From Macrostomum hystrix (Eukaryota > Animalia > Platyhelminthes), in contig CATNEN010000035.1 in NCBI GenBank assembly GCA_950097015.1, positions 186,001 to 250,000 of the forward strand: DNA of 64,000 nucleotides, in the 5' to 3' direction. The translations under genes and the position numbers were made by a program. This document shows, piece after piece, positions 5,511 through 64,000 of the stretch; the first letter of the stretch is position 1; every line of letters starts with the position of its first letter. The notes under the pieces were generated by a model. The model ran no database searches, was not told the origin of the DNA, and saw only the letters and a program-made list of their open reading frames with translations.

Positions 5511-6135
5511 TCTATCCAACTTTTATATTTATATACATTCTGTCTGTCTCATAGCTCTATGCTCTCGGATTCCCATGGGATTACACAGACTAGTTATCCC
5601 ATTCTTCCGTGCAGCTGGTCCACTTCCCAGTGTCCGTCTCAAATGTCCACCTGTCTGACTTCTGACTGACAACTGGCCACTGGCACTCTCTGTCACATGA
5701 TAATCGTGTTTTTCTTGTTTTGATCAAAAAGAATAAACGAAAAAAAGCAAATCAATTCCCAGAAAATCACGCAATTGAAAGTAGACGAGTCATTATATTT
5801 CTGGGCTACGGAGGACTATTGGGCTCGGCAACTCCCTAATGATAATATTCGATTTCCCCATCCGCCTGTTATTTTATCCGCGTATTAACGAAAGCCTTGC
5901 AAAGCTTCTGTCCACCTCCGAGGTCAGGTTAATTACTTCAGCACTTCCGAAACTTTTCTTTCTGAACAAAACTATCCAATTTTTTGTCTGCAAAAACCCC
6001 TTAAAAAAGAATCTATGCCGAAACACAGTTTGCTACCTGACCAAGGAAATAAATTATTGCCCCTAGTCTACCCATGCCCCAAACAAGCTGACAGCAATCC
6101 GCCTTGGCTATCCGCTAGAAAAATAGATAAATAGC

Positions 6136-6374
<239 letters not shown>

Positions 6375-6854
6375 ATTTCCATTTCTTGCACCTTCTCAGC
6401 AACCAACCCAGCCTATTCAAGCAGATTCAGTCACAACAATGCAGAAATAGATGAGAAGAGACGGCCTGTTTTGAATTGAATGAAGGCTTTATTCTTTGGC
6501 ATTTTCTCTTTGACATTGTAGAAGCGACCTTGTGTATAAGCGGGCAAATGAATGAGATAGAAATGCTTAGAGGAAAACGGATCGGGATAAAGCATTTAGT
6601 TTAGTCGCGCATATGCCACGCATGCATTATTTTATCGAGGTCAGTCAAAATGAATAGTCCAATATAGCATACTGTGGTTAAGTAGTGCTCATTTACTTAG
6701 GTGACGTTGCAAGTGGCTGTTGCACTGGACACAACATGCTTTCACACTCAGGTGGGTCAGCGTTAATGGCTTCTTGGCATTCCTACCTTAAACTAACCTT
6801 TTACAATTGTCACCTTCCTGCGCATTTCAATGCACTTTTCACAGGTCACCTCCA

Positions 6855-58396: not shown

Positions 58397-61106
58397 ATGT
58401 GATCGGTGATTTTACTGACTTGGTCAGGCAGACTTTGTGCTTCCAAGGCTTCCAGAAATATTTTAAAAGGCGTTCAAGTAGGTCGGAACATTACATTTCG
58501 AGAGCTCCGTTTCTAGAAAATAGCTGCTTTGTCACAGATTTTTGTTACCATTCAATATACCTCATGATGTACTGATCCACTTGGGCTGACGTTTAGTGGG
58601 CAGCAAGTGACACTTGCACAATTATCCGCAGGTAAATGCCTAATTGTGAATAGAAAACTTTCAAGGCATTAAAAAATTAAAATGTGTTTTAAAAGCTGCC
58701 ACTAAATAGTTCAGGCCATGCCTTCCCTAGCGCATGCATTCGTGAATCTGTAAATGCTCTCGTTGCTCCCAAACGCTATCTACCCAGCAAAACCACATTT
58801 GCTTTGGCAAATTCTTGATTTTGCACACAATAAGCGCAAATTTGCCTTCTTCCCGGTATAAAACAACCCAAACAAATTTATCCCCTCTTAAAGTACATTG
58901 ATTTTCTTACAGTAGCACCTTTTTTCGGCACACGGAGCGACAAGCTTGCGTCATTTCTCCCGCGCATTTTCATAAATTTCTTTCGCATTCTTCTTTTTTA
59001 AGCGCATATTACCGATTATTTTCACTTACTTCCGACCTTCAGTAGAATAATACGAGTATAAACAGAGCAGTTAGTTTTTCGTGCGAATATAAACTATACG
59101 AAAGTTTAAATACAACTTCCAATCGATGTTTTCCGCATCTGTAGGCTAGTTTCAGCAGGTAAAAGCGTTGTATTTTTACACCTTGTTTTACCAGTATTTT
59201 TATTTTAATTCAATGAAATTACGTTTACGGTCCTATGAATTTTTTGGCTGGTTTTAGGGTGTCAGATACGACACTGTTTAAATCCAACAATTAAACCAAG
59301 AACAACCAAAGTACTCGTTCAAGGACGCAAGACAACAAAAAATGCACTGAGGAGGTCGCCAGCGCCAGCTGATTAACCTAATTCATCAGTTGAGTATATT
59401 TTTGGGAGGTCGTTGTTTTTCTGGCCAATTGAAACTTCCGTTCAATTAAATATTTTCTAAAAAAGAGTAATATTATCCAAAGATGCAGCCTCTTGTATAT
59501 CCACCTATTACTAAATCTCTAATCTTTCTTTGTTTTCTACCTATACAAAATGTCTAATCATTGTTTGCTTGTTTGTGTAAATGCTATGTCTCCCAAACGG
59601 CTAAGCAGATTTTTTCGTTTCTGAGGTCAAAATAGCAAAATATAGATTAAATTGGTCCGAATTGGTACACTTATTTTTATTAAGCGTAATCCCATTGCTC
59701 AGGGGAATAAATATTCGAAAAGCTATTTTAAATAGGCTTTTCTAATGAATTTTTATATCATTTCATATCAGCTTGCCAGTTTTAATGATAGCGAGCGCAC
59801 TAGTAAGAACTTGAGGGAGGCCACACAGAGGGTGGCGTAGGGGAGCTAGTCTAATATACTAAAAATGTAAATCTTGCTTGCATGCTTGCATGGTTGCTCG
59901 CTTGGTTGTAATTGATTTTCTCCCGAACGGCTCAACCCATTATCACCATTTCTTCACCAGAATATGCCAAATATGGGGACACATATACACATATTTTTTA
60001 TTAAGATTAACTTCATTGCTAAGGGGATTAAATATTCGAAAAACTGTTTTACATAAGATTTTAAGGCATTCAATCAGAGCCAGTTTTGTCAACGTATGTT
60101 ATAAGACTGTCCAAAAGTCGTATAAATGTGTCTAACAGTTTTCTAAACGTGTCCAAAAGTTTCATAAAAGTGTCCAACAGGTGTCTAAATGTGTCATACG
60201 GGGAGCAAGGGAGCAAGTCACATACTAAAATAAAATAAGCCAGACTACAATGCAGCTATCACATTGTTCACAATGGATGAATTTGTTTAAAAAACGAATA
60301 CGATAGTTTTTTGTGAATGAATTCGGTCAAATACAAAAGCCTGACAGTAGGAAGACCAGGGGGTATTTCAAATACTTACATTTTTTTCTGAATTGCCCAT
60401 ATTACATATTTGAAAATATACACATTTCTGTAATTAGACCAATCGCCATGAAAATGCAGAGCACGGGCTAATAGTTTCCGCTCCATCCAATGAAAGAACT
60501 TCCAGAATAAAAAACATCGGCATCGTTGAGATATTCAACGATTCTTGTCGGTGTGTCTGGTGGCAAAAACAACCAATGCAGGCATACTTTTTCTCACAAA
60601 ATTTCATCATGTAACCATTTCGGCTATCATTTTTGACTAGTTTAGATTGATTAAATAGATTTTTTCTATTTTTAACCAATATAGATTCGCCGTAGATGTT
60701 TATGCAGAGTAATGCTTTTTGTCTTTGTCACCAGGGTCTTCGACAAGAACCGCTGAATATCACAACGATGCTGACCCGGACGGCTTTGAAAGTTAGCTGA
60801 TCGTAAAAGGGCGGAAATTTTTTATCCATGTGGTGAAATTTACCGAAAATCAGTCATTCGATTTGGGAGCTATCGTTAATTAGGCAAAATGAGTACTTGA
60901 AATAAGCCGCGTGGTCTTTCCCGAGTGGAAAATTAGCGGAGTCTTCCCATAGACTATTTAGAACACACAGCCGAGAGCTCTGGTGATTTTTCTGAAAACT
61001 AAATTAGCCGAGCAGAAAATTTTGCCGTTTTTCACGTAGAAAAATTAGAAATTATTGGGTGCAGTTTTACAACCTGACGTAGCAAAAGATACTGTAACTG
61101 TTTCCT

Positions 61107-64000
61107 TCACTCAGATTCTTGCCACTTGCACCTGAGCTCATCCATCAGCCAACGAAGATTGGAGCTCTCCAACGACTCCAGTTTGTTTGTAATTGAAACT
61201 GTCAAATCCAAGTCCAATGAAAACATTGCTGCAACCAGCAGCTCCTGTTCGTCCGCATCCTCCCGAACAGCCACATCCTGGATCCAGTCTTGAGCGATCG
61301 AATCACCCTCTTTCTGCAGCTCATGTCGCAGGGCCCACAGAAGAGCGTCAAAGTTCACGAAGAATGACATTTTATCGATGTCCAGCTGAAGCGGAAATAG
61401 TTTCGACAGAGGTCGGGACAAGAACCTGAGTTCCAGTCGTTGGTCGAACAAAAAGCTAAACTTCCACGCGGAGTCCCGGCTTGTCAAATTCTGCCACACA
61501 CATTCCACAGTAGCCTCAGTCGCCGATCTTTCGACGGACCAATCTATTCCTCTGCTCACCACGTGTCCTCTGCAGTCGTTGACAACTGTCTCTGCAGTCC
61601 ATCGGTAGCCGAACTTGAGGCAGGCCAGCGCTCTGAGAGCCTCCCGTGCTGAGAGGGCGCAGTCTGGCAGTCTGGAGATCAGCTCTGCGAGAGAATCTTG
61701 GGATTTCATGCTGCAGTCGCCATGAGAAAGATACAGCAGGCACTCTCTCACCACGTCGTAGATCTCACAAAACTCGATGCTGTTGGATGTTGACAGAAGC
61801 CGAAATCTCAAGTCTGGCAGGATTTGGAATGGGTGGAAGTAGAACCTGCCTGACTTGCTTACTGGCCTGAGACTGCTCATAAACTGCAGCAGCAACTGAG
61901 GCAGTTGATCAAGGACTTTTTTCAATGTGCTTGCGATGCTTTCCAGAGTCTGGTCTATGCTTCCGGCCTTCTTGTCAGAACCCTTGAGGTACACTGCAGC
62001 ATCCTCTAAGAAAAAATGTTCCATGACCCGGCCATCAGTGTTGTCAGCCGTGCGGCTGCTCTCCATCCTGTCATGCAGCATCTGCAGCGAGCTCCTCACG
62101 AGACTCACAAGGTTTTCCGGCTTCCACCGCTCTTTTGGTGTCTCTTCTATCATTCGGAACGTGACAGTTTTCACGTGATACGGCTTCACACCTTGCAAAC
62201 CGAAACCATCTTTGTGGCAGATCACTTTCTTTACGAGGTACTTGAGCGTGACGAACAGCTGGCCCTGCAGAGTGCTGAGACTTCGCAACATCCGCTTCTC
62301 CAGAAAGCTTGTGCTCACTCGGAGCTCCTGGCCTTCTTGATCAGGAGAAGCTGCGTGCACCACGTGACAGGGTGATGAGGTCGAAGTGAGATCGTGGAGG
62401 AGTGACTGCATCACGCGCTGAGATATGTTAGAGCTGAGTAGCCGGGGTGGCTCGAGCGGCGCGATGGGAGGGTAGCGGCAGAGGCGGCAGGCGGAGACAT
62501 CGTCGATTGCAGGCCTCAGAGCGGCTCCAGGAGAGGGTTTGGCAGGATTGGAAGCTGCAATGGAAAGTTGGGAATACTTGCATAGGTTTGGTTTAAATTT
62601 CAGAACAAACAGATGGATACTGCTTAAAACCGTGTTGATATTTTTTAAAAGAGAAAAGAGACTCACCAAAACCAGAGCACCGAAGATGGCCATTGCTCAG
62701 CTCATGCTGGTCGCTCGATTCGACGCACTCGCACAGGCCTCTGACATGGTACAGTCGGCCAGGAATCAGACTCATCATGTCGATGTCGGACTCGATGTCG
62801 ATTCTTCCGTCGAGGGTTCGTAGGTTGTTGCCCCAGCCTTCCGAGAAGCTGCCAACTACAAAAACTGCATCAGAATTCAGTCTCTGCCTCTGGATCTCCT
62901 GCAAGACATCAGCAATTGCAATCTGCAGAGCAGCTCTGGAGTCTACGAACCCTGACTGAGTAAGCGCAGAGTGCAGCTGTTGGCTCAGCTCCGAGTCGCT
63001 GGGGTAGTCTCTAAAATGAAATTCAGTTGCAACAACAAAAAACTGTCAATGAATCAGATTGCGCAATCTCCATCACAAAGTATACAAACTTACACTAACA
63101 CCGATTCAAAATGTGAATCTGCAGACATCGATTCAAAGTAGATGTTTCCATGTGCCATGACAAGGGAGTCGAAAACTTTCTGGTGATTATTCGCGAATGC
63201 AATATTGATTGGCAATTGGCCAGTGCTCGTTTTTAAATTAAAATCTGCCTGTGCCCTGATGAGAGCATCCACGACATTCTGATGGCCATTCTCTGATGCG
63301 ATATAAAGAGGTGACTCGCCGGATTTTGTTTGAAGATCAACATCAGCTTGAGCTTTGATTAGCAATTCCACGACTTTCTGATGACAATACTGTGACGCAA
63401 TGTATAGAGCTGATTCACCAGTGTTTGATTGAAGATTAACGTCGGCCTGAGCTTTGATGAGCAAGTCCACGACACCCTGATGACCATCGTATGACGCGAT
63501 GCAGAGTGGCGAGAAGCCGTTGACCTTCTCTTGAAGATTGACGTCACCTTGTGATTTGATGAGTGAATCCACGACACTCAGGTGACCATTCTGTGATGCG
63601 ATGTAGATAGGCGAGGAACCGTTGATACTCTCTTGCAGATTGACTTGGGCTTGCGCTTTCAGGAGAAGGTTCACGACTCTCTGATGACCATTCTGTGACG
63701 CAATGTGAAGCGGTGAGCAGCCATTGACTTTATTTCGAAGATTGACGTCGGCGTGTGCTTGAAGGAGTGAATCAACAACTTTCTGATGGCCGTTCTGTGA
63801 CGCAATTAGGAGAGGGGACTCTCCAGCATTTCTTTGAAGATTGACATTCGCTTGTGACTTAATTAGCGATTCCACGACTTTCTGATGGCCATTCTGTGAC
63901 GCCATGTATAGAGGTGAAGAGCCGTTATTTTTCTCTTGCAAATTGACATCGGCTTGGGCCTTAATGAGCAAGTCCACGACCTTCTGGTGACCACTTTGAG
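61107..64000 (-). CDS. Ankyrin-repeat plus cGAS-like/Mab-21 nucleotidyltransferase (cGLR), 5' truncated by the window edge
   Basis: Exons >64000-63094 (at least 8 full ANK repeats, GxSPLxIASQNGHQxVVxxLIxAQADVN), 63010-62667 (GSFSEG...ESDID) and 62554-61107 (IDDVSACRLCRYPP, CHVVHA, ELRVSTSFLEKRML, VKPYHVKTVTFRMIEE, W.PENL, HFF). GT-AG sites and phases 2 and 1 join all three in frame. Confidence 0.9.

What the first reader, a model, noticed from the sequence alone, without database searches (positions are those of the whole stretch)
61107..64000. Ankyrin-armed cGAS-like receptor with an apparently intact catalytic triad
Seen: three ORFs that the track lists separately splice into one protein made of an ANK array, a linker, an NTase core and a Mab-21 helical lobe with a long helical C-terminal extension. 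The GS loop (62853-62836), DxD (ESDID, 62793-62779) and third acidic motif (IDDVSA..C..YP, 62510-62490) are all present. Established: cGAS/cGLR enzymes use this G[S/G]...DxD...D architecture to make cyclic or oligonucleotide second messengers, and some invertebrate cGLRs carry accessory repeat domains. Inference: the ANK array acts as a ligand- or protein-sensing module for an active innate-immune sensor, in a lineage where such signalling is poorly described. The ANK repeats vary mainly at surface positions, which could reflect specificity diversification.
Basis: partly seen in the sequence, partly recalled or inferred. Interest (0 to 1): 0.75.

Follow-up and report, generated by a model that had tools for sequence, protein, structure and literature searches.

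The report
Flatworm ankyrin-armed cGAS-like receptor gene
This is a real, expressed flatworm gene that joins 26 ankyrin repeats to a cGAS-like signalling enzyme, but this gene family was already catalogued in a related flatworm in 2023 and its trigger, product and receptor are still unknown.

Summary
Spliced contigs from four runs of one study skip both introns, and one contig links the ANK exon, exon 2 and exon 3.

The gene starts outside the window and encodes about 1532 aa. The parts are 26 ankyrin repeats, a cGAS-like catalytic domain with GS, DID and a third Asp, and a 254-aa helical C-terminal domain with no recognisable fold.

A Macrostomum lignano relative (65-70% identical) gave a confident model. 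Its best structural matches are cGLRs, cGAS and MB21D2 (Z 17-19), above bacterial CD-NTases (12-14) and TUTase/OAS (10-12).

It belongs to a radiation of at least 90-150 copies in this genome. Of 20 close paralogues, 18 carry ANK arrays of 6 to at least 48 repeats.

Li et al. 2023 already list M. lignano ANK-cGLRs and cloned five for their screen. No flatworm enzyme is among their 15 characterised active ones. This scan also found the family elsewhere in this genome.

A diverged STING-like domain family (at least 13 exons) exists here too. Enzyme activity and ANK sensing remain inferred.

Verdict: new member of a known kind.

The parts
63094..64000 (-). 3' part of exon 1. It holds the last ~9 of 26 ankyrin repeats plus a short linker. 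The exon continues beyond the window to an ATG at window-equivalent 65900 (L004:5901).
   Evidence: Pfam Ank_2 E 3.7e-64 and Ank E 1.5e-55. A 936-aa ORF in L004. 26 repeats counted. Contigs cover L004 up to about 5990 and nothing beyond.
63011..63093 (-). Intron 1, 83 nt, GT..AG, phase 2.
   Evidence: Sequence read. Contigs of 3 runs skip exactly this stretch (joint 3011->3095 in L004 coordinates).
62667..63010 (-). Exon 2. It encodes the N-terminal spine helices and the first half of the NTase core: beta1, then GS, then DID on beta2, and an H/C cluster.
   Evidence: Translation. The GS and DID motifs are conserved in paralogues and M. lignano relatives. Secondary-structure placement comes from the proxy model.
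62848..62853 (-). Gly-Ser of the NTase activation loop (VVGS).
   Evidence: GS is present in 21 of 21 copies examined.
62779..62787 (-). Asp-Ile-Asp, the first two catalytic carboxylates. It lies 20 residues after GS.
   Evidence: Present in 20 of 21 copies; L027 reads D-I-G.
62555..62666 (-). Intron 2, 112 nt, GT..AG, phase 1.
   Evidence: Sequence read. Contigs of 4 runs skip exactly this stretch (joint 2555->2668 in L004 coordinates).
61872..62554 (-). Exon 3, first 227 codons. It encodes the strand with the third catalytic Asp (A-I-D, Asp codon 62502-62504) and the Mab-21 helical lobe.
   Evidence: Pfam Mab-21_C scores 21.8 bits against a cut-off of 24.1. The third Asp is kept in 18 of 19 copies where the region was captured. 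The equivalent region of the proxy model aligns to cGAS residues 161-521.
61110..61871 (-). Exon 3, last 254 codons. This is a family-specific, mostly helical C-terminal domain.
   Evidence: AlphaFold2 on the window's own sequence gives pLDDT 88.6. There is no convincing structural relative: VIA best Z is 8.2 (generic TPR-like), Foldseek best E is 0.16, and atlas TM is below 0.5.
61107..61109 (-). Stop codon.
60888..61106 (-). 3' UTR. Contigs end at about window 60888-60908.
   Evidence: pieces starting at L004 889 and 909. No AATAAA was found.

Best explanation
What it is. This is a three-exon, expressed gene of a Macrostomum-type flatworm encoding a protein of about 1532 aa. The protein has an N-terminal solenoid of 26 ankyrin repeats, a cGAS-like receptor (cGLR) catalytic domain, and a 254-aa helical C-terminal domain that is conserved throughout the family. 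The catalytic domain consists of a Pol-beta-type NTase core plus a Mab-21 helical lobe. The gene is one older, singleton member (about 62% identity to every other copy examined) of a lineage-specific radiation of at least 90-150 such genes. Most of the close copies carry ANK arrays of very different lengths.

How it most likely works. This part is inferred from what characterised cGLRs do. The enzyme rests inactive. Binding of a ligand switches on the GS/DxD/D active site. The ligand most plausibly acts through, or is gated by, the ANK solenoid and/or the C-terminal domain. The active site then makes a cyclic di- or oligonucleotide from NTPs. That product is read by one of the genome's diverged STING-like domain proteins.

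What is shown: the gene structure, expression and splicing, the domain architecture, the cGLR fold on a close proxy, conservation of the catalytic residues, the family expansion, and the presence of STING-like domains.

What is inferred: catalysis, the product, the activating ligand, the role of the ANK array, and the link to STING.
For: - Splicing and expression.
- In-frame GT..AG junctions.
- ANK: Pfam E 3.7e-64; 26 repeats.
- Fold: the proxy model has pLDDT 89.3 and pTM 0.90. Foldseek's top 50 PDB hits are all cGAS or cGLR, with probability 1.00. VIA Z is 19.3 for human cGAS and 19.1 for MB21D2.
- Exhaustive structural ranking: Cv-cGLR1 18.3, MB21D2 17.9, Sp-cGLR1 17.1, mouse cGAS 17.0, Tc-cGLR 16.5 and MAB21L1 15.9. 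These stand above CD-NTases (12-14) and TUTase/PAP/OAS (10-12).
- Motif spacing: GS, X20, DIDM, X52, IDD fits the spacing in the Li et al. criterion.
- Catalytic residues are conserved across paralogues and M. lignano relatives and in the five diverged M. lignano constructs printed in Table S3.
- Purifying selection acts on the catalytic core in the young clade, omega about 0.48.
- Census: at least 91 exon-3 and at least 148 exon-2 matches, and at least 89 further Mab-21_C hits over the cut-off.
- 18 of 20 close paralogues have an ANK ORF upstream on the same strand.
- STING-like family.
Against: - There is no biochemical evidence for any member. Five M. lignano members were cloned for the Li et al. 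screen, and the 15 characterised active enzymes come from insects, anemones, molluscs, hydras and corals, not flatworms.
- Pfam's Mab-21 NTase model (PF03281) does not recognise the family.
- The window protein's Mab-21_C score is below the cut-off.
- The residue before GS is Val, not Gln or Thr.
- The catalytic domain is mildly acidic (exon 2 net -9, core +5). The whole protein is acidic, unlike DNA-binding cGAS.
- The convergence of the three carboxylates could not be measured.
- The structural model is of a 65-70% identical relative, not of the window's joined protein.
Confidence: 0.6

Rival explanations
1. The cGLR domain itself senses nucleic acid (dsRNA or dsDNA), as characterised cGLRs do. 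The ANK array is not the sensor. It would instead be a localisation, scaffold or effector-recruiting arm.
For: Every cGLR ligand named in Li et al. is dsDNA or dsRNA, apart from cases marked as unknown ligand. The exon-3 core is basic, with pI 9.0 and net charge +5. ANK repeats are generic protein-protein modules.
Against: The five M. lignano constructs begin after the ANK hits that Table S2 lists. They met poly I:C and ISD45 dsDNA in the screen and are not among the 15 characterised active enzymes. The exon-2 half of the core is acidic, net -9. ANK array length varies 6 to at least 48 repeats between near-identical enzymes, which looks more like receptor diversification than a fixed anchor.
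Confidence: 0.2
2. It is a catalytically silent Mab-21-type scaffold or adaptor, in the manner of MAB21L1 or MiD49/51. It would use the ANK array and the C-terminal domain for protein interactions and make no nucleotide signal.
For: MAB21L1 (Z 15.9) and MiD49 (Z 14.2) are also good structural matches. No activity is reported for any flatworm member. Two of the 20 paralogues have lost a catalytic residue yet keep open frames: L027 reads D-I-G and L042 has Asn for the third Asp.
Against: GS, DxD and the third Asp are retained in nearly all copies, and in M. lignano relatives at 35-60% identity. That retention is hard to explain without catalysis. The active cGLRs score higher than MAB21L1 and MiD49.
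Confidence: 0.15
3. It is an active NTase with a non-immune role, for example in reproduction, development or self/non-self interactions. The family expansion would then be driven by something other than pathogens.
For: No expression site or induction data were obtained. The only RNA evidence is assembled contigs from one study. Rapidly expanding gene families are not always immune.
Against: The architecture (a variable repeat array on a signalling enzyme), the copy-number radiation and the co-occurring STING-like family parallel immune receptor repertoires. In Li et al., cGLR radiations in bivalves and corals are read as immune.
Confidence: 0.05

Closest known systems
Macrostomum lignano ANK-cGLR proteins catalogued by Li et al. 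2023 (PMC9980059). Examples are PAA86972.1, PAA45980.1, PAA57558.1, PAA93208.1 and PAA68676.1 (Table S3 #89-93), which also carry Ank_2 hits in Table S2.
   Same: Same family. Identity is up to 63-70%. They share the GS..E.WGN..L.G..D..SD.D motif with its roughly 20-residue spacer, the RP..D.V....C.YP motif, the Mab-21_C lobe, the C-terminal domain, and N-terminal ANK arrays in many members.
   Different: It comes from a different species, and no one-to-one orthologue is evident: the best hit (63%) is no closer than this genome's own paralogues (62%). The window gene has 26 ANK repeats. M. lignano models in the databases are mostly 850-1150 aa, and many are fragmentary.
Characterised cGLRs and cGAS: Cv-cGLR1 (8gjw), Sp-cGLR1 (8gjy), Tribolium cGLR (7lt2), human and mouse cGAS, and human MB21D2 (7lt1).
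   Same: The bilobed NTase plus helical-bundle fold is shared over about 265-280 aligned residues, with Z 16.5-19.3. The G-S / [DE]x[DE] / [DE] catalytic signature is present.
   Different: Sequence identity is only 12-19%. The family is not recognised by Pfam PF03281. The spacer between GS and DxD is at the upper limit of 20 residues. An H/C cluster sits in the N-lobe instead of the cGAS zinc thumb. The protein has an extra 254-aa C-terminal domain and a 26-repeat ANK arm, and it is acidic overall. No ligand or product is known.
ANK-fused cGLRs of the coral Stylophora pistillata (Li et al. 2023, Fig. 4C).
   Same: The same idea of a cGLR core fused to ankyrin repeats, which the authors describe as potentially ligand- or protein-interacting.
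   Different: Whether the fusion has a common origin was not tested. In the coral only 3 of 42 cGLRs carry accessory domains. Here the ANK fusion is the rule among the close copies (18 of 20) and the arrays are far longer.
MAB21L1 (5eog) and MiD49 (4woy), which are Mab-21 proteins without known nucleotide synthesis.
   Same: Same fold, with Z 15.9 and 14.2.
   Different: The genome has one canonical Mab-21 gene elsewhere, at C24:4852916-4853761, scoring 128.7 bits on PF03281. The window gene is not that gene. It keeps a full catalytic signature.

Membership tests
cGLR (criteria of Li et al. 2023, PMC9980059) | Active-site motif h[QT]GS [X8-20] [DE]h[DE]h [X50-90] h[DE]h | tested here: met
   The window protein reads V-V-G-S, X20, D-I-D-M, X52 (counted across the exon 2/3 junction), then I-D-D (criterion text). 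There are two deviations. Val stands in place of Q/T before GS. The residue after the third Asp is D here, and it varies among relatives (N, I, E). The M. lignano members that the authors accepted show the same deviations.
cGLR (criteria of Li et al. 2023) | [quoted passage not shown] | tested here: met
   Proxy model residues 1-337 align to human cGAS 161-521, with Z 19.3, 267 residues aligned and rmsd 3.6. The Mab-21_C Pfam hit on the window's exon 3 scores 21.8 bits. Relatives score 24.9 and 30.7 bits.
cGLR (criteria of Li et al. 2023) | [quoted passage not shown] | tested here: met
The test was done on M. lignano P0001, which is 70% identical to exon 2 and 65% to exon 3.
cGLR (functional definition) | Ligand-activated synthesis of a nucleotide second messenger | not testable with these tools
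   This needs biochemistry. No flatworm enzyme is among the 15 characterised active cGLRs of Li et al..
Pfam Mab-21 (PF03281, NTase domain) | Score at or above the gathering cut-off of 24.1 bits | tested here: not met
   There was no hit on exon 2, on exon 3 or on four full-length M. lignano relatives. The genome-wide scan finds only the canonical Mab-21 gene on C24.
Pfam Mab-21_C (PF20266) | Score at or above the gathering cut-off of 24.1 bits | tested here: not met
   The window's exon 3 scores 21.8 bits, E 2.1e-4. Many paralogues pass: 90 genome hits over the cut-off. So do the relatives P0002 and P0014.
Ankyrin repeat (PF12796 / PF00023) | Repeated 33-residue helix-turn-helix units matching the Pfam models | tested here: met
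   Ank_2 scores 213.8 bits and Ank 182.4 bits. There are 26 units with a 33-34 residue period.
cGAS proper (vertebrate-type DNA sensor) | Basic DNA-binding surfaces and a zinc thumb in the C-lobe | tested here: inconclusive
   The net charge of the catalytic domain is about -4 (exon 2 -9, core +5). The H/C cluster lies in the N-lobe part encoded by exon 2. The surface could not be inspected because no coordinates were available.
cGLR-STING axis | A STING ligand-binding domain encoded in the same genome | tested here: inconclusive
   PF15009 gives one hit at 25.0-25.6 bits, just under the cut-off of 27. It covers profile positions 3-145 of 182. A three-sequence profile hits only STING chains among the best 60 PDB matches, best E 8e-4. 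There are at least 13 such exons in the genome.

The most novel reading that the evidence does not exclude
Macrostomum flatworms may have built an NLR-like, diversified receptor repertoire out of ANK-cGLR fusions. There are at least 100 genes, with arrays of 6 to at least 48 repeats. In this reading the ankyrin solenoid, and not nucleic acid, recognises pathogen or danger proteins. It then switches on nucleotide second-messenger synthesis, which is read by the lineage's own soluble STING-like proteins. These would be the first protein-activated cGLRs. They would also be a full cGLR-STING network in a phylum reported to have largely lost it.
Probability: 0.2. Interest if true: 0.8.

Novelty: new member of a known kind. 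Interest (0 to 1): 0.4.

Why it matters
Li et al. [quoted passage not shown] Macrostomum is the exception. This genome shows that the exception is large, on the scale of the bivalve radiations.

The genome holds at least 90-150 copies, mostly ANK-armed, and a diverged STING-like family alongside them. None of these enzymes has a known trigger or product. The variable ANK arms make them good candidates for cGLRs that sense something other than nucleic acid.

For this particular window the value is confirmatory. It gives a clean, RNA-supported gene model of one older family member. It is not a new kind of system.

Tried and rejected
- Direct sequence searches of exon 2 and exon 3 against solved structures found nothing meaningful.
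- Pfam PF03281 never hits the family.
The conservation analysis therefore rests on 20 close paralogues plus M. lignano proteins.
- The C-terminal domain gave only generic helical-repeat matches. VIA best Z was 8.2, below the level the tool itself calls meaningful for helical folds. Foldseek's best hit was the TRIF N-terminal domain at E 0.16. Atlas TM scores were below 0.5. I do not name a fold. UniRef's automatic name 'Terpenoid synthase' for fragment P0013 found no support.
- An N-terminal membrane anchor is rejected. The maximum Kyte-Doolittle mean over 19 residues is 1.02.
- The test for diversifying selection on the ANK concave face was not decisive. Omega is about 1.03 against 0.53 in the framework. 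However, dS at the concave positions is also three times higher, which suggests repeat mis-registration.
- A word search for relatives of the STING-like exon found none. The protein-atlas look-up was uninformative.
- A pseudogene or annotation artefact is rejected. The frames are intact, the introns are canonical, and spliced contigs exist.
- The joint 4757->5591 seen in one run has non-canonical ends and 38 foreign letters. I take it for an assembly chimera between ANK repeats, not an intron.
- The large representative-protein search was not run. No claim here rests on the absence of relatives.
Full report
**Observation**

The region holds three minus-strand ORFs.

Reading the sequence gives the following junctions:
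- The ANK ORF ends at 63094, directly before gtaagt.
- The next coding stretch begins at 63010, after a ttttag acceptor.
- That stretch ends at 62667, before gtgagt.
- The last exon begins at 62554, after ttgcag.

Both junctions keep the reading frame. The split codons read GT|A and G|CT.

The window is G000:C35:186001-250000 of a 220-Mb, 42-contig assembly. Fetching the flank shows that the ANK exon is a single 936-aa ORF. Its ATG lies 1900 bases beyond the window's end (L004:5901). An in-frame stop lies a few codons upstream.

**Expression and splicing**

Four public runs from one study hold the stretch. The run type is not on record, and the runs are kept as contigs.

Laid on L004:700-6600, their contigs behave as follows:
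- They skip exactly window 62555-62666 in four runs.
- They skip exactly window 63011-63093 in three runs.
- Both skipped stretches have CT..AC ends on the + strand, which is GT..AG on the gene strand.
- One 1996-nt contig carries 1556 nt of ANK exon, all of exon 2 and 96 nt of exon 3.
- Coverage runs from about L004 889 to 5990. It is zero from 6019 to 6600 in all four runs.

I read this as transcript-derived assembly. That condition is not met. The caveat is that these are contigs of one study, so they show presence and not expression level.

**What the protein is**

*ANK array.* The ANK exon matches Ank_2 at E 3.7e-64. It contains 26 repeats of 33-34 residues.

*Sequence-level signals for the enzyme part.* Exon 2 and exon 3 have no significant sequence match to solved structures. 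Their only Pfam signal is Mab-21_C at 21.8 bits, under the 24.1 cut-off.

*Relatives.* The word-index protein search finds relatives only in Macrostomum lignano, at up to 63% identity. UniProt names them 'Mab-21 domain-containing' or 'ANK_REP_REGION domain-containing' proteins. A few unnamed metagenome sequences also appear. The organism is therefore a relative of M. lignano.

*Fold.* I folded M. lignano P0001 as a stand-in for the joined protein. It begins exactly where exon 2 begins. It is 70% identical to exon 2 and 65% identical to exon 3. The alignment had 41 rows.
- The model has pLDDT 89.3 and pTM 0.90.
- Foldseek's top 50 PDB hits are all cGAS or cGLR, with probability 1.00.
- VIA-align gives Z 19.3 to human cGAS (267 residues aligned, rmsd 3.6) and Z 19.1 to MB21D2.

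The exhaustive search over 48,161 representative chains ranks the matches as follows:

| Match | Z |
|---|---|
| Cv-cGLR1 | 18.3 |
| MB21D2 | 17.9 |
| Sp-cGLR1 | 17.1 |
| mouse cGAS | 17.0 |
| Tribolium cGLR | 16.5 |
| MAB21L1 | 15.9 |
| MiD49 | 14.2 |
| bacterial CD-NTases | 12-14 |
| TUTases, poly(A) polymerase, OAS | 10-12 |

All of these matches fall on model residues 1-340. That gradient places the enzyme in the Mab-21/cGLR family rather than merely in the Pol-beta NTase superfamily.

*Placement of the catalytic residues.* In the model, GS follows strand 45-48. DID opens strand 71-85. The third Asp lies in strand 126-135. This is the canonical placement. I could not measure distances because no coordinates are given out.

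*C-terminal domain.* The last 254 residues were folded from the window's own sequence, giving pLDDT 88.6. The domain is a mostly helical body. It has no convincing relative in the PDB or the ESM Atlas.

**Catalytic signature and its conservation**

The window protein reads V-V-G-S, then 20 residues, then D-I-D-M, then 52 residues, then I-D-D. This fits the spacing of the published cGLR motif. There are two deviations: Val before GS, and a non-hydrophobic residue after the third Asp.

Among the window gene and 20 close paralogues:
- GS is present in 21 of 21.
- DxD is present in 20 of 21.
- The third Asp is present in 18 of the 19 copies where that region was captured.

The motifs are also kept in M. 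lignano relatives down to about 35% identity. They are kept as well in the five diverged M. lignano sequences printed in Table S3 of Li et al..

**Family**

*Copy number.* The genome holds at least 91 exon-3-like and at least 148 exon-2-like matches with the same two-exon layout. There are 90 Mab-21_C hits over the cut-off, of which one is the single canonical Mab-21 gene on C24.

*Position of the window gene.* It is about 62% identical to every other copy examined. At least 14 others form a young clade at 88-97% identity.

*Close paralogues.* Of the 20 examined, 18 have an ANK ORF upstream on the same strand, with 6 to at least 48 repeats. In 19 of the 20, exon 3 is uninterrupted.

*Selection in the young clade.* Nei-Gojobori omega values are:

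| Region | omega | dN |
|---|---|---|
| Catalytic core | 0.48 | |
| C-terminal domain | 0.63 | |
| ANK framework positions | 0.53 | 0.067 |
| ANK concave-face positions | 1.03 | 0.41 |

dS is also three-fold higher at the concave-face positions. Mis-registered repeats may therefore inflate the concave-face figures. This is compatible with diversification but does not prove it.

**Literature**

Li et al. 2023 (PMC9980059) define cGLRs by three criteria, which I applied in the membership test. The paper makes several statements that bear on this finding:
- Some cGLRs are fused to ankyrin repeats (Fig. 1C; S. pistillata).
- Table S2 lists M. lignano accessions with Ank_2 hits.
- Table S3 lists five M. 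lignano constructs, #89-93, that were cloned for the screen. They are plainly of this family.
- The 15 characterised active enzymes come from insects, anemones, molluscs, hydras and corals.

So the family and its ANK fusion are already catalogued, and no activity has been reported for it.

Earlier notes of this scan describe the same family on other pieces of this genome, with the same conclusion.

**STING**

- PF15009 gives one sub-threshold hit at G000:C2:9104529-9104996. It scores 25.0-25.6 bits against a cut-off of 27, with E 1.4e-5, and spans profile positions 3-145 of 182.
- phmmer of that exon against the PDB returns only STING chains.
- A three-sequence profile of that exon returns STING for all 60 best matches, with best E 8e-4.
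- The exon has at least 13 relatives in the genome. At least seven of them lie in a cluster on C2 between 8.97 and 9.10 Mb.

Other agents of this scan report soluble double TIR-STING genes in this genome. I verified only the STING-like domain signal and did not test the architecture. A receptor for a cGLR product is therefore plausible here, but no link between the two has been shown.

**Mechanism and verdict**

Shown:
- an expressed, spliced gene with the layout ANK(26), cGLR domain, unknown C-terminal domain;
- a retained catalytic signature under purifying selection in the family;
- a large lineage-specific radiation with variable ANK arms;
- co-occurring STING-like domains.

Inferred:
- that it makes a nucleotide second messenger on activation (about 0.6);
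- that the ANK arm is the sensing or gating element (about 0.3);
- that the signal goes to the STING-like proteins.

Some points count against a cGAS-like nucleic-acid sensor. The protein is acidic: exon 2 has net charge -9, the C-terminal domain -11 and the ANK exon -10, while only the exon-3 core is basic. The ANK-less M. lignano constructs are also not among the enzymes reported active with dsDNA or dsRNA.

Overall this is a real and well-formed example of a known, catalogued but functionally uncharacterised family. I class it as a new member of a known kind.

**Left out**

Noticed in passing
G000:C2:9104478-9105038 (L025:1450-2010, minus strand), plus at least 12 further exons: a C2 cluster at 8.967-9.076 Mb, C7:13142035, C39:4228060/4249009/4253427/19158105 and C38:7495203: This is a family of diverged STING ligand-binding-domain-like exons. 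Pfam STING_LBD scores 25.0 bits, just under the cut-off of 27. A small profile of these exons hits only STING chains among the best 60 PDB matches. The neighbouring upstream exons gave no Pfam match.
   Followed up: partly
window 62677-62748, minus strand (exon 2 residues H88, C93, C95, H108, C111): There is a conserved H-x4-C-x-C ... G-H cluster between the DID strand and the third-Asp strand. The equivalent residues are invariant or nearly so in the M. lignano alignment (H84, C89, C91, H104 of P0001). They are also visible in the five diverged Table S3 sequences. This may be a zinc site, at a different place from the cGAS zinc thumb.
   Followed up: no
L028-L043 (paralogue loci on C3, C18, C20, C38, C2): In the young paralogue clade, exon 2 shows a median dN/dS of 1.37, with 75% of pairs above 1. 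Exon 2 encodes the spine helices, GS and DID. However, dS is only about 0.026 over 113 codons and the pairs are not independent, so this may be noise.
   Followed up: partly
L028, L033, L034, L037 against L041, L044 (ANK ORFs upstream of the cGLR exons): ANK array length differs enormously between enzymes that are about 90% identical. It ranges from 6 repeats to 37 and to at least 48, and two arrays run off the fetched DNA. This points to rapid expansion and contraction of the repeats.
   Followed up: partly
Proteins P0039-P0043: These relatives are 36-41% identical. They come from JGI metagenome contigs and from a record labelled as a Kangiellaceae bacterium MAG. They are most likely animal (flatworm-like) DNA in environmental samples, and in the last case mis-binned into a bacterial genome.
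   Followed up: no
G000:C24:4852916-4853761, minus strand: This is the genome's single canonical Mab-21 gene. It scores 128.7 bits on PF03281 and 100.4 bits on Mab-21_C within one 468-aa open frame. It is presumably the developmental Mab21L1/2 orthologue and is distinct from the expanded family.
   Followed up: no
L004:4757-5591 (beyond the window, inside the ANK exon): One contig of one run joins these two places. The ends are non-canonical (AC..TT) and 38 unrelated letters lie between them. I take it for an assembly chimera between ANK repeats, not an alternative intron.
   Followed up: no
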